This document shows positions 13,417 through 57,059 of a stretch of DNA of 64,000 nucleotides, piece after piece. A program made the translations under genes and the position numbers. Below the pieces are notes generated by a model. The model ran no database searches and was not told where the DNA came from. It was given only the letters and a program-made list of their open reading frames with translations. Numbering within the stretch: the stretch's first letter is position 1; every line of letters begins with the position of its first letter. Source of the stretch: Macrostomum lignano (Eukaryota); assembly GCA_002269645.1 (NCBI GenBank), contig NIVC01001574.1, positions 202,190 through 266,189 of the forward strand, written 5' to 3'.

Positions 13417-38709
<25,293 letters not shown>

Positions 38710-39249: not shown

Positions 39250-41672
39250 GTGCAATCAGTGGGAGTGCAATCAGTAGGTGTGCAATCAGTGGAAGTGCAA
39301 TCAGTAGGTGTGCAATCAGTGGAAGTGCAATCAGTGGGAGTGCAATCAGTGGGAGTGCAATCAGTGGGAGTGCAACCAGTGGGAGTGCAATCGGTGGGTA
39401 TGCAATCAGTGGGTGTGCAACCAGTGGGTGTGCAATCAGTCGGAGTGCAATCAGTGGGAGTGCAATCAGTGGGTGTGCAATCAGTGGGAGTGCAATCAGT
39501 GGGTGTGCAATCAGTGGGTGTGCAATCAGTGGGAGTGCAATCAGTGGGAGTGCAATCAGTGGGAGTGCAACCAGTGGGAGTGCAATCGGTAGGTATGCAA
39601 TCAGTGGGTGTGCAACCAGTGGGTGTGCAATCAGTCGGTGTGTAATCAGTGGGAGTGCAATCAGTGGGAGTGCAATCAGTGGGTGTGCAATCAGTGGGAG
39701 TGCAACCAGTGGGTGTGCAATCAGTCGGAGTGCAATCAGTGGGAGTGCAATCGGTAGGTGTGCAATCAGTGGGTGTGCAATCAGTGGAAGTGCAATCAGT
39801 GGGAGTGCAATCAGTGGGAGTGCAATCAGTGGGAGTGCAATCAGTGGGAGTGCAATCAGTGGGAGTGCAATCAGTGGGAGTGCAATCAGTGGGAGTGCAA
39901 TCAGTGGGAGTGCAACCAGTGGGTGTGCAATCAGTCGGAGTGCAATCAGTGGGAGTGCAATCAGTGGGAGTGCAATCAGTAGGTGGGCAATCAGTGGGTG
40001 TGCAATCAGTGGGAGTGCAATCAGTGGGTGTGCAATCAGTGGGAGTGCAATCAGTGGGAGTGCAATCAGTAGGTGTGCAATCAGTGGAAGTGCAATCAGT
40101 GGGAGTGCAATCAGTGGGAGTGCAATCAGTGGGAGTGCAATCAGTGGGAGTGCAATCAGTGGGAGTGCAATCAGTGGGAGTGCAACCAGTGGGTGTGCAA
40201 TCAGTGGGAGTGCAATCAGTGGGAGTGCAATCAGTGGGAGTGCAATCAGTGGGAGTGCAATCAGTGGGAGTGCAATCAGTGGGAGTGCAATCAGTGGGAG
40301 TGCAATCAGTGGGAGTGCAACCAGTGGGTGTGCAATCAGTCGGAGTGCAATCAGTGGGAGTGCAATCAGTGGGAGTGCAATCAGTGGGAGTGCAATCAGT
40401 GGGAGTGCAATCAGTGGGAGTGCAACCAGTGGGAGTGCAATCGGTAGGTATGCAATCAGTGGGTGTGCAACCAGTGGGTGTGCAATCAGTCGGTGTGTAA
40501 TCAGTGGGAGTGCAATCAGTGGGTGTGCAATCAGTGGGTGTGCAATCAGTGGGAGTGCAACCAGTGGGTGTGCAATCAGTCGGAGTGCAATCAGTGGGAG
40601 TGCAATCGGTACGTGTGCAATCAGTAGGTGTGCAATCAGTGGAAGTGCAATCAGTGGGAGTGCAATCAGTGGGAGTGCAATCAGTGGGAGTGCAATCAGT
40701 GGGAGTGCAATCAGTGGGAGTGCAATCAGTGGGAGTGCAATCAGTGGGAGTGCAACCAGTGGGTGTGCAATCAGTCGGAGTGCAATCGGTGGGAGTGCAA
40801 TCAGTGGGAGTGCAATCAGTGGGAGTGCAATCAGTGGGAGTGCAATCAGTGGGAGTGCAATCAGTGGGTGTGCAATTAGTGGGAGTGCAATCAGTGGGAG
40901 TGCAATCAGTAGGTGTGCAATCAGTCGAAGTGCAATCAGTGGGAGTGCAATCAGTGGGAGTGCAATCAGTGGGAGTGCAATCAGTGGGAGTGCAATCAGT
41001 GGGAGTGCAATCAGTGGGAGTGCAATCAGTGGGAGTGCAACCAGTGGGTGTGCAATCAGTCGGAGTGCAATCAGTCGGTGTGTAATCAGTGGGAGTGCAA
41101 TCAGTGGGTGTGCAATCAGTGGGTGTGCAATCAGTGGGAGTGCAACCAGTGGGTGTGCAATCAGTCGGAGTGCAATCAGTGGGAGTGCAATCGGTAGGTA
41201 TGCAATCTGTGGGTGTGCAATCAGTGGGTGTGCAATCAGTGGGTGTGCAATCAGTGGGTGTGCAATCTGTGGGTGTGCAATCAGTGGGTGTGCAATCGGT
41301 AGGTGTGCAATCTGTGGGTGTGCAATCAGTGGGTGTGCAATCTGTGGGTGTGCAATCAGTGGGTGTGCAATCAGTGGGAGTGCAACCAGTGGGTGTGCAA
41401 TCAGTCGGAGTGCAATCAGTGGGAGTGCAATCGGTAGGTATGCAATCTGTGGGTGTGCAATCAGTGGGTGTGCAATCAGTCGGAGTGCAATCAGTGGGAG
41501 TGCAATCGGTAGGTATGCAATCTGTGGGTGTGCAATCGGTAGGTGTGCAATCAGTGGGTGTGCAATCAGTGGGTGGGCAATCAGTGGGTGTGCAATCTGT
41601 GGGTGTGCAATCAGTGGGTGGGCAATCAATGGGTGTGCAATCAGTGGGTGTGCAATCTGTGGGTGTGCAATC
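39250..41672. repeat. 15-bp minisatellite (TGCAATCAGTGGGAG)n, ~160 copies, with higher-order block duplications
   Basis: Direct reading. A diagnostic variant block recurs at ~39590 and ~40445. Confidence 0.98.
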
Positions 41673-42142
41673 ACCGAGTCCAACCGCCCCGTGCTGCTGC
41701 AGCATTGACAGTCAGAGCCGACAACCGCACGCACCAGTGGCTCCAGCTTCCCAAGCCAGCCCTCTCGAGCTGTGGATGCTTCAAGAGCCCCCCACACGAT
41801 CTGCACGGAGACCCGCAGCAAGTGGCTCGCGGCGGGGGGTCCGCAGATTTGCAGTGGAATTTTTATTTATCGAGTTTGATGGCAGCGCTCGGAGACTGGC
41901 GATGAAGATGCTTTACAGTGCGCTGGCACGGAGCGGAGAGCCACTTTGGACATGCCGGAAATTGGCGGGCGACCCTGGATCGATTGATTACGAGAGCTCG
42001 ATTGAAAATTTCTATTTTTTTATACAGAAGCTGGATGAAGGTTTGTGGCGATTTTTACGATGCAGACACCGGCGAAGTAAGGATTAAAAGGACGGTTGGG
42101 CAGCCTCAGTTCAGCTGCAATCTGCAGAAGTGGTTCGTTTCA

Positions 42143-45528: not shown

Positions 45529-48500
45529 TCACATGTGCTCAGGGTGCTCCCGCAGCTGCTCAATAAAGTCCTGCGGCTTCATCTGGCCCGAGCAGATGAG
45601 GTGCACCGCCACCATCAGGGGGAACCGTTGCAGCTGGCCCTCCTCCTGCAGGGCTCGGTGCACCTCGGCCGCGATGAGGGGGCCCTGCAGACGCTGGCCG
45701 TCCAGCATCTCCTTCTCCAGCTGGCGCAGCGGCTTGCCGGTGAGGACCATCGCCTCTCCCAGCTTGCGGTTGCGGCCGCCGTAGCAGGTGGTCACGAGAT
45801 CGTGCATGCCAAGCGGCCCAGAGCCGTCATGGGTGGCTGCGGGTGGGGTGGTAGGCGGGTAGATAGGTGGATAGGTACCTAGGTAATTGGGTAGGTAGAT
45901 AGGTAGGTAGGTAGATAGGTAGTCAAGTTTGATAGGTAGCTAAGTAGATAGGTAGATAGATAGGTAGCTAGGTAGAAAGGTAGGTAGATAGGTAGGTAGA
46001 TATGTAGATAGATAGGTAGCTAGGTAGAAAGGTAGGTAGATAGGTGGGTAGATAGGTAGCTAGGTAGAAAGGTAGGCAGATAGGTAGCTAGGTAGAAAGG
46101 TAGGTAGCTAGGTAGATAGGTAGATAGGTAGGTAGATAATAGGTAGCTAGGTAGCTAGGTAGATAGGTAGCTAGGTAGATAGGTAGCTAGGTAGATAGGT
46201 AGGTAGTTAGGTAGCTAGGTAGATATGTAGGTAGTTATTTGGGTAGGTAGGGTAGCTTGTGGCGAGGCAGTGCATCTCAGTGGTAACGGTGCGTGTCTGA
46301 CCCTCGCGCTAGAGCACCCCCATGTTTGATTCGGCACCGGGCCACATTAACTTGGGGCCTTCTTTAAAAAAAATAACTTGAGGCTGTTCCAGCAGCCTGA
46401 GCGGAAGAGCTCAGCGGAATGGGCCTGCCTGCCTCCTGGCTGCAGGTGGCCTCGAACTTCTGCGACTTACTTAAGCGTCGGTAGCTTGTAACAGGTGGGC
46501 AGTAACAAAAGCAAGTTACGCAAATTTGCCAACTCACCCGCCCATTTGACATCCTTGGTGTTGTAGCAGGAAGAGATGATGTCCCCCATGCCGCAGCTCT
46601 GCATCAGTGTGCGCTTCGTCACGCCTGGGCGATAAATGATTGCGTAACGGCTGGATTGGCGTTGTTGAAAGACAGACAGACAGACAGACAGACAGACAGG
46701 CAGACAGACACTAAGACAGACAGATAGACAGACAGACAGACAGACAAACACACAGACAGACAGACACTAAGACAGACGGGACAGACGGACAGGCACACAC
46801 AGACACACAGACCGCAGTCTCACCAGCAGAGCCGTAGAACCGCTGCACATATCGCAGTATCTCCATGAAGCCCAGCCGGATCACAGCAGCCTTGGTGTTG
46901 TCCCCGAAGCCCAGAGCGTCGCAGAAGCCGGCCCCGGTGGCCACGATGCTCTTCAGGGCACCGCAGATCTCCACGGAGAATTCGTTCTCAATGATGCTGA
47001 TCCGGAAGTACGGCGTCTGAAACAGGCGCTTGAGCTCGGCGGCCCGGATGGGGTCCCGGCAGCCGAGGGTGGCCTCGCAGTACACCTCCTTGGCGATCTC
47101 TGGGGCGAGGTTCGCGCCCATCAGCACCGCGCATTCCATGCCGAGGTTGCTGCGAATCAGGTCGGTCAGCAGGCTGAGGCCTCTCGGCATTGGCTCCTGG
47201 GAATCACAGATCGGCTGGTTGTTCACTGAGCACCGCTGCCCTCCCTTGATTCTTCACTGAGCACCGCTGCCCTCCCCTGATTCTTCACTGAGCACGGCTG
47301 CCCTCCCCCTGATTTTTCACTGAGCACCGCTGCCCTCCCCTGATTCTTCACTGAGCACCGCTGCCCTCCCCCTGATTCTTCACTGAGCACTGCTGCCCTC
47401 CCCCTGATTCTTCACTGAGCACGGCTGCCCTCCCCCTGATTTTTCACTGAGCACCGCTGCCCCCCTCCCCTGATTCTTCACTGAGCACCGCTGCCCTCCC
47501 CCTGATTCTTCACTGAGCACCGCTGCCCTCCCCCTGATTTTTCACTGAGCACCGCTGCCCTCCCCCTGATTTTTCACTGAGCACCGCTGCCCCCCTCCCC
47601 TGATTCTTCACTGAGCACCGCTGCCCCCCCCCTGATTCTTCACTGAGCACCGCTGCCCCCCTCCCCTGATTCTTCACTGAGCACCGCTGCCCTCCCCCTG
47701 ATTCTTCACTGAGCACCGCTGCCCCCCCCCTGATTCTTCACTGAGCACCGCTGCCCTCCCCTGATTCTTCACTGAGCACGGCTGCCCTCCCCCTGATTCT
47801 TCACTGAGCACCGCTGCCCTCCCCTGATTCTTCACTGAGCACCGCTGCCATGGCCCTGATTCTTCACTGAGCACCGCTGCCATGGCCCTGATTCTTCACT
47901 GAGCACCGCTGCCCCCTCCCCTGATTCTTCAATGAGCACCGCTGCCATGGCCCTGATTCTTCACTGAGCACCGCTGCCATGGCCCTGATTCTTCACTGAG
48001 CACCGCTGCCCTCCCCCTGATTCTTCACTGAGCACCGCTGCCCTCCCCCTGATTCTTCACTGAGCACCGCTGCCATGGCCCTGATTCTTCACTGAGCACC
48101 GCTGCCATGGCCCTCACCTCTTCCTGCCCAGCAAAGACGCCCTTGATTAGCGAGACTGCACAGGCACCCGGCCGCGTGTGACCCTTCAGCCCAGCGAGCA
48201 CTCGAGGCAGAAACTGCTGAGGCAGCACAAATATGAGGATGTCAGCCCAGCTGCCCAGCTCAGCAAGGTCAGTGACAGCGATGGCATTCTCTGGAAGGCG
48301 AGTGCCCGCCAAGTACTTCACATTCTCATGCCGTGTATTGATAATGTCTGAAAGCTTTTCTTCACCAATCAGCTCCTCGTGAACCCAGATTCGCACCTGA
48401 TTGTTGAATTCAAATGATGGTAAACACAGATGAGTCTCACAGGTTATTGAACTAATAAACTGAATGCACTTTCACTAAAAGCTATTTTTGTGTTTAACAA

Positions 48501-49267
48501 AAATAAAAGCTTCATTTTCTATGAAGCTTTCTTAAAAGGTGTATAAACAACTTTTTAAACTATATTAGCCAACACACATTCTTTTACAAAGAATTCATCC
48601 CATAAAATTGTACTTAAAAATTAGACAATTTAGCCTAGATATTACATTAGACTTGATACAAATTTAAAGACTGTTAATGATTACTATTATCTAAACTGGT
48701 ATTGTTGTTATACCCAAAAACAAAATAAAATATAGCAAAAAACATGAAATAAAAACATAATTGCTTTATGAATTATACTAACTTCAGCACTAGTTGCTTA
48801 AAGCAAAGATTATTTAATAATTAAAATTCATAAAATTTATATTTAGCCTTAGGATAGAATGCATGGATATAAGGTAATCTTTCAATATTATACCATGAGA
48901 AACAAAATGATAGACCTTGCTGAGTCTATATTTGAATGTTTTAGGAATTGAATCTCAAGGAACCAACTAAATATTATAGGTCTAATAAATTTATAGATTA
49001 TATTGACATGTTTTACTGCCATATAGGCCAAATTGGGAGCCAATATTCTACTACACTTGAAATATTACTAATAAAATTTGTTTAGGCCTAGTAAAGTGAC
49101 AAAAGCACAAATCAAAAACCGATTTTTGAAACATAAGTCAGATGAGTTGACAATTTTCATTTTACCTCATTGCAAAACTCAGTTGAGCTGCGGGCATTGA
49201 GTGCGCATATTTTTGAAATGCAAGATCCCATATTGCCTGAACCAACAACAGCGACATGCTTTTCCAT
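45529..49267 (-). CDS. GPD1: NAD-dependent glycerol-3-phosphate dehydrogenase (GPD1/GPD1L family)
   Basis: Exons on minus strand: 49267-49166, 48396-48118, 47214-46824, 46624-46538 (cassette), 45836-45529, all GT-AG. Motifs VAVVGSGNMG, INTRHENVKYL, SLIKG, LMGANLA, VEICGALK, GDNTKAAVIRLG, DLVTTCYGGRNRK, GQRLQGP and a C-terminal HPEHM match GPD1. Length is 388 aa with the cassette and 359 aa without. Confidence 0.93.
45860..46250. repeat. Compound (TAGG/TAGA/TAGC)n microsatellite in the last GPDH intron
   Basis: Direct reading. Confidence 0.92.
46670..46805. repeat. (GACA)n microsatellite with CACTAAG interruptions in GPDH intron 3
   Basis: Direct reading. Confidence 0.9.
47222..48112. repeat. 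~29-32-bp minisatellite (CTGATTCTTCACTGAGCACCGCTGCCCTCCC)n forming GPDH intron 2
   Basis: The array occupies almost the whole 903-bp intron (47215-48117). Confidence 0.95.
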
Positions 49268-50150: not shown

Positions 50151-51027
50151 TCACTCCAGGTGCGAATCTTCGGCTTCCACCTTCTGGTTTTTTGGCTGAC
50201 CCTCGTAATAGCCGCTGTAGACACTGTTCTGGGACTTTCCTCCGCAGTACTTTTTCCGTTCACCGGGGCAGGGAATGTAGCACAGGTCCTCTGGCGCTCT
50301 GCCGTGGAAGCCATACGAATCACCGCACCAGCACTCGGTACCGCGCTGCAGTCCGATGTAACCCGACTTGAACAGCTTGCACATCTGAAAGCACCTTTCT
50401 ACCGTCATGTCTGCAGCGTTGCCCGCCCGATTCGGCAGGTCGCGGTCGTCGCTGCGATCGTCATAGCAGCCGATGTACCTTGCGCTGGCGAAGGCTGCGC
50501 GAAAAAAAGGTTTTTAGTTTGGTTGGGCTAAAAGATTACTTGATTTAAAACTAAATAGACGGCTTGCAAGAGTGCACTGAAAGAAGTTCTATAAAACTCA
50601 GTTACATGCGCGCCATTCCCTGTGTGCCATTATATGTGTATATAATAATAATAATAACAACAATAATAATAATACTAAAAATACTAATAATATTAATACT
50701 AAAAATAATTGATTACACCTGCCCCAAATAGGCCAGATGTGCAACCGACAGCTCAGCCTACTTATACATGTATAACATATCGCTACATAGAGCTAGTATG
50801 ATTTATTCCTTTAAGACTTAAGCTTGACGTCTTATGCACTCTTTTTGGCTGATCTTAGAATTAAACCAACTCAACTTGTGTGCTTCTGTAATTAAGAAAG
50901 TTAATTAGGCAGATCAGCTCAGCTCACCGTCAATAGCAACCTTCATGCAGCTTGAGGCCCAGTGAATTCGCAGAGCGGTCATAAAGGCAATCAGCATGAC
51001 CGTCACGGCGTGACCTCTGCGCGACAT
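50151..51027 (-). CDS. Secreted single-WSC-domain protein A (~147 aa)
   Basis: Exons 51027-50928 (signal-like MSRRGHAVTVMLIAFMTALRIHWASS) and 50494-50151, joined by a phase-1 GT-AG intron. WSC motif YIGCYDD...MTVERCFQMC...YIGLQRGTECWCG...CYIPCPG...CGG..NSVY. Confidence 0.88.
50712..50758 (+). mobile_element. Truncated copy of the SINE-like repeat
   Basis: CACCTGCCCCAA...GTGCAACCGACAGCTCAGCC matches 12975-13015. Confidence 0.55.
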
Positions 51028-51954: not shown

Positions 51955-52105
51955 TAGTGGTCTTTGATGGGTACTAGCATTAGCTGGGGTAATTTTGTGT
52001 AGGCGCCCCCTCCCAGAGTCTTTGGATTGAACATCCGTACGCAGCCTTCAGGTGTGCCGCGCAATAGCTGCGGCTGAGCTGCCGGTTGCACATCTGCCCA
52101 TTATC
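51955..52105 (-). mobile_element. Dispersed SINE-like repeat, inverted copy
   Basis: The reverse complement aligns with 12985-13110. Confidence 0.65.
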
Positions 52106-52975
52106 GGCTCAAGCGAGAGGCCTGGTGGCCGGGTCACTACAACGACGTCGAGCGATACGTCAAGCAGTGTGTGAGATGCGCGGAGATCCGCACGTCACCA
52201 GCCCGCACGATGCACACCTTGGCCAGCGGAGACAACGGGCGGAGACAAGCGACCACGAGCACGTGCAAGGAGCCGGCTCCCTCCTCATCGCGATGGACGC
52301 CTACTCTGGTTGGCCGGAGGCGGTGCTGGTGCCCGACAAGACGGCCAGAACGACGCTGCGGATCCTGCGGGCGATCTTCTCGAGGCGAGGCGTGCCCCGG
52401 ACCCTGGTATCTGCAGACAACGCGCCAGAATTCTGCGACGGCGAGCTGCAGCATTGGCTACAGCGCATTGGGTGCAACCTGGTTCACTCGCCGCCGTACC
52501 ATCCGCAGTCCAACGGCTGTGCTGAGCGCATGGTCCAGACGGTGAAACACGGGCTCCGGGAATTCGCAGCGCACCGCGGATCCTTCGAAGCGTACCTGGC
52601 CAAGCTGCTGCTCAATTACCGTTCGACGGCGAGGAGCGACGGCCGGGGCAGCCCGTCGGCACTGATGGGCCGACAGCTGAGGAGTCCGCTCACGATGGCC
52701 TTAGAGATTGACGCACAGTTGTTTACCAGCCAAGCTCCAGTGCAACGGCCGAGCCCGCTCGCTAAGTGGTCCAAGCTGGCAGCAACACGGCGGTGATCAT
52801 CCGCGACAACAACCGGCCGGTCCTCGCCCATCGGGACCAAATTCGGCCGCTGACCGTCGACTCGACAGTCACGCCAGGGCAGGAGCAAGTGACCGAGCGC
52901 GGACCGAGACTCCCGAGGCCAGGCAGCCCCAACACCGAAATCGAGGTGCCGGCGGCTCCGAGGCGTAGCAACCTT
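52106..52975 (+). mobile_element. Ty3/gypsy-type LTR retrotransposon integrase remnant (frameshifted)
   Basis: Zinc-binding end WWPG..VERYVKQCVRC; catalytic core MDAYSGWPEA, GVPRTLVSADNAPEF, HSPPYHPQSNGCAERMVQTVK; SPSALMGRQLRSPL; C-terminal RRS motif. No RT or LTR recognised. Confidence 0.88.
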
Positions 52976-53479: not shown

Positions 53480-54641
53480 TCAGTACACAATCTTGTACAC
53501 CGAGTTGTGCAGCAGGCCGCCGCAGCGGTCTTTACGCTCTCCGACGCACCGAGTTGAGCACATGACCTCTTCCGCTTTGCCGTGCTTGCCGAACTCCTGG
53601 CCGCACCAGCATGAGATGCCCTCCTGCAGGCCGAAGTACTTGGCTTGGTACTTGCGGCACCAGGTCTCGCACAGTTCCCGCTTCATGTCCGGGTTGTAGC
53701 CGGCCAGGGTGGGCAGGTCTCGGGGGACTCGCTTGTCCACGTAACAGCCCTCGTAGACTGGATGTGGCTTAGGGGCCGCCGCCTTTATGACTGCGAGCGA
53801 GGGGTGACAGAGTGGGGGAGTGACAGAGTGGGGGAGTGACAGAGTGGGGGAGTGACAGAGTGGGGGAGTGAAAGAGTGGGGGAGTGACAGAGTGAGGAGT
53901 GACGGAGTGGGGGAGTGAAAGAGTGGGGGAGTGACAGAGTGAGGGGTGACAGAGTGGGGGAGTGACAGAGTGGGGGAGTGAAAGAGTGGGGGAGTGACAG
54001 AGTGAGGGGTGACAGAGTGGGGGAGTGACAGAGTGGGGGAGTGAAAGAGTGGAGGAGTGACAGAGTGAGGAGTGACGGAGTGGGGGAGTGAAAGAGTGGG
54101 GGAGTGACAGAGTGAGGAGTCGGGGAGTGACAGTGGGGGAGTGACAGAGTGGGAGGAGTGACAGAGTGAGGAGTGACAGAGTGAGGATTGACAGAGTGAG
54201 GAGTGGGGGAGTGACAGTGGAGTAGTGACAGAGTGAGGAGTGAAAGAGTGGGAGAGTGACAGAGTGAGGAGTGACAGAGTGGGGAGTGACAGAGTGGGAG
54301 AGTGACAGAGTGGGGAGTGGCAGAGTGAGGAGTGACAGTGAGGAGTGACAGAATGGGGGTGACAGTGAGCAGTGGCAGAGTAAGGATGAGAGTTGGGCGA
54401 GTGACAGGCAGTTAATTATGAGCTACTTAATTTAAGCAACTCAAGAGTAAACAAACCATAAATACTTTTATACTCATGGCTAAAAAACACAATTTCGATA
54501 CATATCCCTGATAGCAGTTCAGATCAAAAGAAAGCCGGTCTCACTGGATTTTTTGCAAGCCAGAACGCCGCGCGTCATCAAGGCGAAGCTGAGCAGCGCA
54601 AGAGCGACTTTCACAGCGTTGAAGCCGCAGGGTCCAGGCAT
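53480..54641 (-). CDS. Secreted single-WSC-domain protein B (~135 aa)
   Basis: Exons 54641-54545 (MPGPCGFNAVKVALALLSFALMTRGVLA) and 53790-53480, joined by a phase-1 GT-AG intron. Motif YEGCYVD..RDLP..MKRELCETWC..YFGLQEGISCWCG..CSTRCVG..CGG..NSVY. Confidence 0.88.
53800..54405. repeat. ~16-bp purine-rich minisatellite (GAGTGGGGGAGTGACA)n in the WSC-B intron
   Basis: Direct reading; runs up to the acceptor. Confidence 0.92.
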
Positions 54642-55702: not shown

Positions 55703-55775
55703 GCCTCGTTAGCGCAGTAGGTAGCGCGTCAGTCTCATAATCTGAAGGTCGTGAGTTCGATCCTCACACGGGGCA
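55703..55775 (+). tRNA. tRNA-Met (CAT), elongator type
   Basis: 73 nt, GCCTCGT...ACGGGGCA, with a paired acceptor stem, D-arm, anticodon CAT at 55736-55738, T-loop GTTCGAT and a T-run terminator at ~55781-55785. Confidence 0.97.
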
Positions 55776-57059
55776 CTACATTTTTGTAATAGATTCTTTT
55801 TACAGTTAATGGGTTAACAGACTCTGAGACAAAGTATACTAGTAGGTTTATGAATTTGTGGGCTTCATTTTGCAAAAAAATATCTAACTGATTAGTTTTG
55901 CTGATTATTCCTAAGTAGAAACGGTACATATACACGTGCGCCGTACGGCAAGATTTTGTAATTTGACCAAATTAAATATGCATATACAGTTCCATTTCTC
56001 AGAAACTAGTCCAAAATAAAAATTATATTTGATTAAAAACCCTACATTTTTTTAAATGCACATCAGAACTCGGAAATATTTATTGAAATGTTTTCTTAAC
56101 TTTGCTTCAGAATAACGGGTCTTACGAAACATATCCAGTAAAAATTCAAGTCGAATGAATGAGTCCGATATTAAATTAAAGTATCTAAATATTATTTTAT
56201 AGCATGACAATAATCTTGTTATTTTGAGAAACCCGTTGAATTTTTTCTGAAATTTTGAGTTTTAACTTCTTGCTTTTTGCAAAATTTACACGCAAGACTC
56301 GCAGATATATATTTATTTATAATAAATCTCGTTAAGATGTCTGTATGATGCTACTGGTGATAAGTAGGCCAAGAATTAGTGCCAACATGTTAACTTTTGT
56401 TTAAATAAACGACGCAAACGAAAAATTGTGCGCCTATTTATGTTTAGAAACGACAAATTTATTGCAACCACACGGATGAACAGAGAGCATTTTAAACACC
56501 AACTAAAAGTTAAACAGACAGGCAGTGAAAACATTGGTGAAGAAAAGCCGGTGACTTGTGACTGGCTGAACTGAATGCAAATAAATTACTAAAAAGTAAT
56601 GAGAAGTGAATTTCAAAAGCAAAAAAATCATTTAGTGTGCGATACATGCTACTGTCTCCTGCCAATTAAGCGAGTAGAAGACATATTTTTGTAAACTTCA
56701 TAGCTGACTAGGGTGAAATTAGATTCAAAGGCTATTTTTCAAAGAAATGCAAATCGTGAACAGCGTTATTGCATCACATGTTGGATCTGAGCCTTTGTAA
56801 TGTTAGGAAGAATTTCAACAGAATAAAAATTCTATAATTATGACGAATATCAAAGTGAAAACAATACAAATGGAAGGCATATACTACCTGTGTTCGTTGG
56901 TAGGAGCGCAATTTGGAGATAAACAGATGACAGATGTTGAAGATTACAAGCACTGAACGGGGGTCACATATCAAAGTAACTGAAGTAGCACATAAGCGGG
57001 CAGCTTGGACGAGAAAATATGTGGAATGGATGATTCAGCATATGAGATCCACTATGAAT

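What the first reader, a model, noticed from the sequence alone, without database searches (positions are those of the whole stretch)
45755..46624. GPDH carries a duplicated, diverged copy of its substrate-binding segment as a symmetric cassette exon
Seen: the 87-nt phase-1/1 exon 46624-46538 encodes GVTKRTLMQSCGMGDIISSCYNTKDVKWA. The next exon starts [27 protein letters not shown]. The two align without gaps from GM onward (GMGDIISSCYNTKDVKWA vs [18 protein letters not shown]) and share GGCATG. Established: this is the human GPD1 [19 protein letters not shown] segment containing D260, T264, R269 and N270. The cassette keeps TxxxSCG but has K and D at the R269/N270 positions, while the terminal exon keeps GGRNR but has lost SC. 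Possible isoforms: skip (359 aa), include (388 aa), or the cassette joined to a weak internal GAG acceptor at ~45755, which would swap the segment. Inference: an alternative-splicing switch between active and altered or inactive enzyme.
Basis: partly seen in the sequence, partly recalled or inferred. Interest (0 to 1): 0.7.

Follow-up and report, generated by a model that had tools for sequence, protein, structure and literature searches.

The report
Internal segment duplication in flatworm GPDH
A divergent glycerol-3-phosphate dehydrogenase gene of the flatworm Macrostomum lignano carries an old in-frame duplication of 29 codons. The duplication created an extra 87-nt exon that is already annotated and looks constitutively included, so this is a small evolutionary curiosity and there is no evidence for a splicing switch.

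Summary
The window is Macrostomum lignano. On the minus strand lies a 5-exon NAD-GPDH paralogue. Its 87-nt exon 4 (46624-46538, phase 1/1) and the first 81 nt of the terminal exon (45836-45756) both match the same 29-residue GPDH segment (human 249-277). A family matrix scores both copies far above every other 29-mer in the window.

The 'alternative-splicing switch' reading is not supported:
- The exon-including 382-aa protein is identical to PAA66267.1, from an annotation built on RNA-seq transcripts. Every other annotated M. lignano copy also includes the exon. No skipped form was found.
- The copies have decayed in complementary halves. Copy 1 keeps the invariant T..SCG and has lost GGRNR. 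Copy 2 keeps [13 protein letters not shown] and has lost TFLESC. Only the including form has the full set (+20 bits over skip or swap).
- The canonical paralogue has its last intron at exactly the exon 3|exon 4 position and phase. This points to a tandem duplication of intron plus exon start.
- The exon is as conserved between homeologues as the other exons (85/87 nt; whole-gene dN/dS 0.12).
- AlphaFold models the including form as a normal GPDH fold with a disordered ~23-residue loop.

Low to moderate interest.

The parts
49166..49267 (-). Exon 1 (ATG at 49267; MEKHVAVVGSGNMGS...FCNE), 102 nt, donor GAG|gtaaaa
   Evidence: The annotated gene span in L006 (3739 nt) equals 49267-45529.
48118..48396 (-). 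Exon 2, 279 nt (VRIWVHEE...FAGQEE)
   Evidence: aligned to human GPD1
47215..48106 (-). Intron 2, almost entirely a 32-nt minisatellite (~28 copies)
46824..47196 (-). Exon 3, 373 nt, ends in phase 1 (…RFYGSA + G of the split codon). Carries K204 and the N205->S change (GALKS).
46625..46823 (-). Intron 3 (199 nt, mostly (CTGT)n). Same position and phase as the last intron of the canonical paralogue Mlig030757.
46538..46624 (-). Exon 4, copy 1 of the duplicated segment (87 nt, phase 1/1): GVTKRTLMQSCGMGDIISSCYNTKDVKWA. Keeps T..SCG and has lost GGRNR.
   Evidence: Included in PAA66267.1 and in all other annotated copies.
45837..46537 (-). Intron 4 (701 nt). Contains an 8/28-nt tandem array (45858-46234) and a repeat-like element.
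45756..45836 (-). Copy 2 of the duplicated segment (first 81 nt of the terminal exon): [27 protein letters not shown]. The N-part is decayed and 2 codons shorter. D260, T264, R269 and N270 are intact.
45529..45836 (-). Terminal coding exon (308 nt including the TGA stop)
45755..45757 (-). Weak: G at -3, and 45% pyrimidines upstream against 55-75% at the four real acceptors.
   Evidence: No protein using it was found.

Best explanation
This is a lineage-specific, divergent paralogue of cytosolic NAD-dependent glycerol-3-phosphate dehydrogenase in Macrostomum lignano (BOX15_Mlig024885g1).

Origin (inferred). On this paralogue's lineage, an old tandem duplication copied the last intron together with the first ~86-87 nt of the ancestral terminal exon. 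Both copies begin right after a phase-1 acceptor, so the first copy became a new symmetric 87-nt exon and the reading frame was kept.

Current state. The exon is spliced in as a normal, essentially constitutive exon. This is shown indirectly, through the transcript-based annotation. The protein therefore carries the 29-residue segment twice.

Division of labour (shown). Selection has kept one good copy of each half:
- The N-terminal half (T..SCG) comes from exon 4.
- The catalytic half (D260, T264, GG-R269-N270-RK) comes from the terminal exon.
- The two inner halves, MGDIISSCYNTKDVKWA and [10 protein letters not shown], have decayed.

Structure (predicted). The decayed inner halves form a ~27-residue insert. 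It is modelled as a largely disordered loop next to the active-site helix of an otherwise canonical GPDH fold.

Function (inferred). It is most likely still an oxidoreductase of the GPDH type. Activity may be altered, because N205 is Ser and 9 other near-invariant positions have changed.
For: 1. Identity. The including isoform is 100% identical over 382 aa to PAA66267.1, and the gene span matches exactly. The best PDB match is human GPD1, E = 3.5e-102.
2. Transcript basis. GenBank models of Mlig_3_7 come from StringTie/TACO plus a de novo transcriptome and TransDecoder, with isoform-frac 0.75 (PMC5730564). All six other M. lignano models or predictions contain the exon.
3. Intron position. The canonical paralogue P0127 splits the Gly codon before [11 protein letters not shown] in phase 1, exactly as exon 3|exon 4 does here.
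4. Complementary decay (matrix scores):
   - Positions 3-12: copy 1 scores +8.0 (null fraction 2e-5); copy 2 scores -27.5 (31% of null is as good).
   - Positions 22-29: copy 1 scores -19.8 (13% of null is as good); copy 2 scores +24.1, against +25.0 for the canonical sequence.
5. Profile HMM of 96 canonical GPDHs. Copy 1 N-half joined to copy 2 C-half scores 502.9 bits. Skip scores 482.8, swap 483.1 and include 503.5.
6. Alignment. MAFFT places the family-invariant C and G in copy 1, and D, T, C, Y, G, R, N in copy 2.
7. Conservation against the ~93%-identical homeologue L001:
   - The exon is 85/87 identical, with no indels and both splice sites kept.
   - Other exons are 97.6-100% identical; introns are ~92% identical and have indels.
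   - Across the CDS there are 16 synonymous and 6 non-synonymous changes, dN/dS 0.12.
8. Structure. The AF2 model of the including form has pLDDT 88 and TM 0.95 to 1x0v. Only residues 271-293 fall below 50.
9. Splice sites. The exon has a strong donor (CGG|gtgagt) and a normal acceptor.
Against: - I have no read-level junction counts. The annotation filter would hide a skipped isoform below 75% of the major form.
- No orthologue from another species was found. Conservation is therefore shown only across the recent homeologue split (dS 0.06), where 87 nt carries little power (1 synonymous and 1 non-synonymous change).
- AF2 is driven by the alignment and gives only moderate confidence to both copies of the helix: 65 for 261-270 and 58 for 291-300. 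It models the skipped form with a higher mean pLDDT (92.7), although residues 251-260 drop to 56. Structure prediction therefore does not discriminate between the isoforms.
- The intron co-duplication step cannot be verified. The two introns share no detectable non-repeat similarity.
- The protein differs from the family at 10 of 109 columns conserved at 95% or more, including N205S and the W of GSGNWGS. It may not be an ordinary GPDH.
Confidence: 0.7

Rival explanations
1. Regulated cassette exon. Exon 4 is included or skipped to switch between two enzyme forms of 382 and 353 aa.
For: - The exon is symmetric (87 nt, phase 1/1), so skipping keeps the frame.
- The skipped form keeps D260, T264, R269 and N270 and has near-canonical length.
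- AF2 folds the skipped form with pLDDT 92.7.
- The annotation filter could hide a minor isoform.
Against: - All transcript-based models include the exon.
- The skipped form replaces six consecutive residues that are 82-96/96 conserved (TFLESC) with DGSGPL-type sequence and carries a 2-residue deletion. It loses 20 bits and drops to pLDDT 56 in that stretch.
- The intron flanks show no extra conservation.
- Both splice sites of the exon are strong.
Confidence: 0.12
2. Swap resembling mutually exclusive exons. Exon 4 is joined to an internal acceptor at 45755 and replaces copy 2, giving a 355-aa protein with K/D at positions 269/270.
For: - The AG at 45755 is the only in-frame AG in the first 130 nt of the terminal exon. 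It lies exactly at the homologous end of copy 2.
- The resulting protein aligns to the family without gaps.
Against: - The acceptor is gGAG|AG, with G at -3 and no pyrimidine tract (45%).
- No such protein was found in any database searched.
- The product would lack R269 and N270. Their Ala substitutions cost 9.1 and 5.6 kcal/mol in human GPDH (PMC9119304).
- The position of the AG follows trivially from the ancestral ...CTGGCTGAGG... sequence.
Confidence: 0.03
3. Decaying gene or pseudo-enzyme. The duplication damaged a redundant paralogue, which is drifting, so the exon has no functional meaning.
For: - It differs at 10 of 109 near-invariant family positions, including N205S and W->M in the NAD motif. 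The canonical paralogue differs at none.
- The canonical paralogue's cluster contains a 314-aa sequence sourced from Logan. No Logan-sourced sequence was found for this gene.
Against: - dN/dS is 0.12 between homeologues, with an intact ORF in three loci.
- Seven of the eight residues of the active-site network are retained.
- The complementary, non-random pattern of decay implies past selection on the composite.
- The gene is transcribed, since the models are annotated from RNA.
Confidence: 0.12
4. Assembly artefact, meaning a local false duplication.
For: The assembly is PacBio-based, redundant and repeat-rich. One copy (L004) has homopolymer indels.
Against: - The same exon is present in four loci, including a 93%-identical homeologue with its own substitutions.
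- It also appears in the UniProt-only protein predictions.
- The two copies are only about 48% identical at the DNA level, which is unlike an assembly duplication.
Confidence: 0.01

Closest known systems
Human cytosolic glycerol-3-phosphate dehydrogenase GPD1 (PDB 1X0V, 1WPQ, 6E90) and the canonical M. lignano GPDH Mlig030757 (P0127)
   Same: - Same two Pfam domains (PF01210 and PF07479).
- 47-48% identity to human GPD1 and 63% to P0127.
- Predicted fold TM 0.95.
- K120, K204, D260, T264, R269, N270 and Q295 are present.
- Same position of the last intron as P0127.
   Different: - Carries the 29-residue segment twice (net +27-29 aa).
- N205 is Ser, and the W of GSGNWGS is Met.
- In total, 10 near-invariant positions are changed.
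- No other GPDH among the top 150 representatives of 1.84 billion proteins has an insert at this site.
Tandem exon duplication, the usual source of mutually exclusive exons (Ivanov & Pervouchine 2022, PMC9013439; Martinez-Gomez et al. 2022, PMC9741552)
   Same: Two adjacent homologous coding pieces that arose by local tandem duplication. The new exon is symmetric.
   Different: - The second copy is not an exon of its own. It is the start of a longer terminal exon.
- Annotated transcripts carry both copies.
- The copies decayed in complementary halves. They did not stay interchangeable.
Engineered in-frame tandem duplications of a helix in T4 lysozyme (Matthews laboratory; recalled from my own knowledge, not checked here)
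   Same: A duplicated segment inside a globular enzyme is tolerated. One copy occupies the native site and the surplus loops out.
   Different: This is a natural, old case split by an intron. Which helix copy sits in the native slot is unknown.

Membership tests
NAD-dependent glycerol-3-phosphate dehydrogenase (GPD1/GpsA family) | N-terminal NAD-binding Rossmann domain plus C-terminal helical domain (Pfam PF01210 and PF07479) | tested here: met
   Precomputed Pfam hits on P0001. phmmer against PDB GPD1, E = 3.5e-102. AF2 model TM 0.95 to 1x0v.
NAD-dependent glycerol-3-phosphate dehydrogenase (GPD1/GpsA family) | Active-site network K120, K204, N205, D260, T264, R269, N270, Q295 (PMC9119304) | tested here: inconclusive
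   Seven of the eight are present in the including form. D260, T264, R269 and N270 come from copy 2. N205 is Ser. Catalytic activity was not assayed.
NAD-dependent glycerol-3-phosphate dehydrogenase (GPD1/GpsA family) | GxGxWG dinucleotide-binding motif (GSGNWGS) | tested here: inconclusive
   The motif is GSGNMGS. The glycines are kept and W is replaced by M (55/56 canonical sequences have W).
Mutually exclusive exons from tandem exon duplication | Two adjacent homologous exons of the same length and phase | tested here: not met
   Copy 1 is an 87-nt exon. Copy 2 is 81 nt at the 5' end of a 308-nt terminal exon, with no boundary after it except a weak gGAG|AG.
Mutually exclusive exons from tandem exon duplication | Mature transcripts contain exactly one of the copies | tested here: not met
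   All annotated, transcript-derived proteins contain both copies. I could not inspect read-level data.
Alternatively skipped cassette exon | Frame-preserving exon with evidence for both including and skipping transcripts | tested here: inconclusive
   Frame preservation is met (87 nt). No skipping product was found. RNA-seq junctions are not available here.
Alternatively skipped cassette exon | Raised conservation of flanking intron sequence relative to constitutive exons | tested here: not met
   Flanks of exon 4 are 58/60 and 54/60 identical to the homeologue. Flanks of exons 1, 2 and 5 are 60/60, 60/60 and 58/60.

The most novel reading that the evidence does not exclude
The two homologous helices, GMGDIISSCY from exon 4 and [10 protein letters not shown] from the terminal exon, compete for the same slot next to the active site. 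Under this reading the including protein is a natural 'duplicated-helix' conformational switch. It would be active when copy 2 is docked and inactive when copy 1 is docked and GGRNR is displaced. Low-level regulated skipping of the exon might tune this further. AF2's only moderate confidence for both helices (65 and 58) and the conservative substitutions in copy 1's helix (L>I, T>S, T>S) are compatible with this reading. They do not show it.
Probability: 0.06. Interest if true: 0.6.

Novelty: new member of a known kind. Interest (0 to 1): 0.3.

Why it matters
If the reading is right, this is a clean natural example of what happens after an in-frame tandem duplication inside the catalytic domain of a globular enzyme. 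The intron-plus-exon-start duplication supplied a new exon ready to be spliced. The two copies then divided the work, each keeping one half, and the surplus became a loop beside the active site.

It is useful in three ways:
- as a teaching case for exon origin and for complementary degeneration within a single exon-sized segment;
- as a caution against calling homologous neighbouring exons 'alternative' from sequence alone;
- as a pointer to a divergent GPDH paralogue (N205S) whose activity is untested.

It does not open a major question. The exon is already in the public annotation.

Tried and rejected
- Orthologues or transcript fragments. Two word-index searches and one exhaustive HMMER search of 1.84 billion representatives returned only M. 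lignano's own copies with the duplication. Longer GPDHs in that list have inserts elsewhere. Caveat: one search did not return P0001 itself, so absence in that index is weak evidence.
- Expression data. The term 'Mlig024885' occurs in no paper text. It also does not occur in the supplements of two M. lignano expression papers.
- Exact look-up of the skipped isoform. The tool turned it away, and I did not pursue it by other means.
- Residual homology between introns 3 and 4, or with the canonical paralogue's intron. There is none outside microsatellites, so the intron co-duplication step stays inferred.
- Alternative-exon signature in flanking introns. Not present.
- AF2 as a discriminator between the including and skipped forms. 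Both fold, so it is not decisive. No coordinates are returned, so I could not tell which helix copy occupies the canonical slot.
- The truncated annotated copy PAA47401.1 (P0125) as evidence of an alternative acceptor. Rejected: its locus, L004, has single-base homopolymer deletions near a contig end.
Full report
**What is there**

Reading the minus strand gives a five-exon gene:
- exon 1: 49267-49166
- exon 2: 48396-48118
- exon 3: 47196-46824, ending in phase 1
- exon 4: 46624-46538, 87 nt, phase 1/1, cccag|...|gtgagt
- terminal exon: 45836-45529, ending in TGA

Splicing all five exons gives a 382-aa protein. It is 100% identical to GenBank PAA66267.1, 'hypothetical protein BOX15_Mlig024885g1' of the flatworm Macrostomum lignano. 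The annotated gene span of 3739 nt equals 49267-45529. The best solved relative is human cytosolic NAD-dependent glycerol-3-phosphate dehydrogenase GPD1, E = 3.5e-102.

Exon 4 encodes GVTKRTLMQSCGMGDIISSCYNTKDVKWA. The terminal exon begins [27 protein letters not shown]. phmmer aligns both to overlapping residues of human GPD1. The first stretch runs to residue 262 through exon 4, and the second starts at residue 257 in the terminal exon.

I built a position matrix for the 29 columns from 96 canonical metazoan GPDHs. Positions 6-27 ([22 protein letters not shown]) are almost invariant. Copy 1 scores -5.1 and copy 2 scores +20.9. All 43,449 other stop-free 29-mers of the window average -95 +/- 12, with a maximum of -42.6. 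There are exactly two copies.

I get 353 aa (skip), 382 aa (include) and 355 aa (swap).

**It is not a misassembly**

The same exon is present in four loci of assembly GCA_002269645.1. Two of these loci are 99.4-99.9% identical to the window (L004, L005). One is a ~93%-identical homeologue (L001, Mlig026562g1). The exon also appears in the UniProt-only M. lignano protein predictions (P0005, P0126, P0129, P0130). My understanding that those derive from a different assembly is from my own knowledge and was not checked here.

**Where the duplication came from**

M. lignano also has a canonical GPDH (P0127, Mlig030757, 351 aa, 63% identical). It carries the segment once: [29 protein letters not shown]. 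Its last intron splits the Gly codon before V in phase 1 (...GACCGGG|gtgagt...ctgcag|GTGTCCGT). This is exactly the position and phase of the exon 3|exon 4 boundary here.

So exon 4 starts where the ancestral terminal exon started, and copy 2 also starts right after a phase-1 acceptor. The simplest origin is a tandem duplication of the intron together with the first ~86-87 nt of the terminal exon. If the unit included the last exon base and the donor, the first copy would have received a ready acceptor and donor and a length divisible by three.

This step is inferred. The two introns are now filled with different microsatellites and share no detectable non-repeat similarity. The only hint is GTGAGTTG, shared by the exon 4 donor and the canonical paralogue's donor.

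**How the two copies evolved**

This is the most informative result. The table gives matrix scores by part of the segment.

| Part of segment | Copy 1 (exon 4) | Copy 2 (terminal exon) | Canonical |
|---|---|---|---|
| Positions 3-12 (T..SCG) | +8.0 (null fraction 2e-5) | -27.5 (31% of null is as good; also 2 codons shorter) | +26.0 |
| Positions 13-21 (helix) | +3.2 (conservatively changed: D kept, L>I, T>S, T>S, CY kept) | +24.2 | +32.1 |
| Positions 22-29 (GGRNRK..) | -19.8 (13% of null is as good) | +24.1 | +25.0 |

A profile HMM of the 96 canonical enzymes gives these scores:
- artificial composite, copy 1 N-half plus copy 2 C-half: 502.9 bits
- including form: 503.5 bits
- skipped form: 482.8 bits
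- swapped form: 483.1 bits

MAFFT places the family-invariant C and G in copy 1, and D, T, C, Y, G, R, N in copy 2. Only the protein that contains both copies has the full set of family-invariant residues. That pattern is expected if selection has acted on the including form. It is not expected if either single-copy isoform were the working enzyme.

**Transcript and conservation evidence**

The GenBank annotation of Mlig_3_7 was derived from RNA-seq. The pipeline was StringTie merged with a de novo transcriptome by TACO at isoform-frac 0.75, then TransDecoder (PMC5730564). The including isoform is therefore transcript-supported and is the major form, or nearly so, at each annotated locus. All other M. 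lignano models or predictions also contain the exon.

The one truncated model (PAA47401.1) is explained by homopolymer deletions near a contig end.

Against the homeologue L001:
- Exon 4 is 85/87 identical, with one synonymous change and one M>I change. It has no indels, and both splice sites are kept.
- The other exons are 97.6-100% identical. Introns are ~92% identical and contain many indels.
- Across the CDS there are 16 synonymous and 6 non-synonymous differences, giving dS 0.060, dN 0.0069 and dN/dS 0.12.
- The intron flanks of exon 4 are not better conserved than those of the other exons. The usual signature of regulated alternative exons is therefore absent.

**The proposed switch**

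Skipping is frame-preserving and cannot be excluded at a low level. The swap needs the acceptor gGAG|AG at 45755. That site has G at -3 and 45% pyrimidines upstream, against 55-75% at the four real acceptors.

The swap product would carry K and D at positions 269 and 270. In human GPDH the R269A and N270A substitutions cost 9.1 and 5.6 kcal/mol of transition-state stabilisation (PMC9119304).

No skipped or swapped protein was found in two index searches or in an exhaustive search of 1.84 billion representatives.

**Structure**

AlphaFold2 with a 58-sequence alignment models the including form with mean pLDDT 88.2. It superposes on human GPD1 with TM 0.95 and rmsd ~2 Å to 1x0v. Details of the region:
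- Residues 271-293 have pLDDT below 50.
- A short helix at 255-261 (KRTLMQS) precedes the insert.
- Both helix copies are predicted, at 265-271 and 291-297, with moderate confidence (65 and 58 for their 10-residue blocks).

The skipped form folds with mean pLDDT 92.7. It loses the 255-261 helix and drops to 56 over residues 251-260.

AF2 therefore says the insert can be accommodated as a loop next to the active-site helix. It does not decide between the isoforms, and I could not see which helix copy is docked.

**The gene as a whole is unusual**

The protein differs from the family at 10 of 109 columns that are at least 95% conserved. The canonical paralogue differs at none, and the other 56 sequences average 0.9. 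The ten changes are:
- W>M in GSGNWGS
- G22A
- H>Q in PHQF
- V161I
- N205>S (human numbering, in GALKN)
- G>A in CDGLG
- F258L
- E260Q
- A265G
- T>I in GPxTAAE

N205 belongs to the hydrogen-bonded active-site network (PMC9119304). Together with dN/dS 0.12, this suggests a constrained but functionally shifted paralogue. It does not look like a dying gene.

**Comparison with what is known, and verdict**

The closest known kind is tandem exon duplication, which often yields mutually exclusive exons (PMC9013439, PMC9741552). This case fails two defining features of that class. The second copy is not a separate exon, and the transcript models carry both copies.

It works more like the engineered tandem helix duplications in T4 lysozyme, where the surplus segment loops out. 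That comparison is from my own knowledge and was not checked here.

No other GPDH among the best 150 representatives has an insert at this site.

The duplication is real, old, transcribed and conserved. It is already part of the public CDS, though I found no description of it as a duplication. The splicing-switch interpretation is unsupported. Interest is low to moderate.

Noticed in passing
window 47215-48106, 46670-46812, 45858-46234; whole window: Three of the four introns of the GPDH gene are largely tandem repeats. Intron 2 holds a 32-nt minisatellite of ~28 copies, intron 3 holds (CTGT)n, and intron 4 holds an 8/28-nt array. The 64-kb window contains more than 20 large minisatellite arrays, for example 39250-41673 (15-mer x162) and 33777-35785 ((CTGT)x506). 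This fits the 15% tandem-repeat content reported for this genome.
   Followed up: partly
window ~46261-46350 (minus strand, intron 4): By eye, this stretch looks like the reverse complement of a tRNA-derived (SINE-like) element (…GGTAACGGTGCGTGTCTGACCCTCGCGCTAGAGCACCC…). It is conserved in the homeologue L001. ARAGORN did not call a tRNA here.
   Followed up: no
window 50151-50408 and 53480-53740 (minus strand); L001, L004, L005 upstream of the GPDH gene: Two WSC-domain genes (Mlig029383 family, 135 and 147 aa products) lie directly upstream of the GPDH paralogue in the three paralogous loci. ORFs with WSC-like Cys motifs sit at the matching positions in the window. One UniProt prediction (P0126) wrongly fuses a WSC gene to the GPDH.
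   Followed up: partly
window 52086-52796 (+): A 236-aa ORF carries a retroviral/LTR-retrotransposon integrase core motif (…PPYHPQSNGCAERMV…), recognised by eye. It lies between the two WSC-like ORFs.
   Followed up: no
window 55703-55776 (+): A tRNA-Met (CAT) gene predicted by ARAGORN.
   Followed up: no
exons 1-3 and the terminal exon of the window GPDH (protein positions 13, 22, 94, 161, 210, 221, 258, 260, 265, 335): The paralogue has changed 10 of 109 near-invariant family residues. These include N205>S of the active-site network and W>M in the GSGNWGS NAD motif. The canonical M. lignano paralogue has changed none. Activity or specificity may differ.
   Followed up: partly
L004 9365-9558 (NIVC01004466.1, near the contig end): The annotated 297-aa protein PAA47401.1 (Mlig024885g3) is truncated by single-base deletions in C and G runs relative to the window. 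This is most likely an uncorrected long-read error, not biology.
   Followed up: yes
P0037 vs P0014 (Lingula anatina GPDH isoforms X1 and X2): Isoform X1 has a 40-aa insert right after GALK. The start of the insert (DIVGISADIIDCV) faintly resembles the following NVTATGAGFVDGL. This may be another duplicated-segment exon in a GPDH.
   Followed up: no
tool behaviour: A search with the C-terminal 180 aa of P0001 did not return P0001, P0122 or P0124, although they contain the query exactly. Negative results from that word index should therefore be read cautiously.
   Followed up: no
cluster 3 (P0128): The canonical GPDH cluster contains a 314-aa sequence sourced from Logan. No Logan-sourced sequence was found for the duplicated paralogue. 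This may hint at much lower expression of the paralogue.
   Followed up: no
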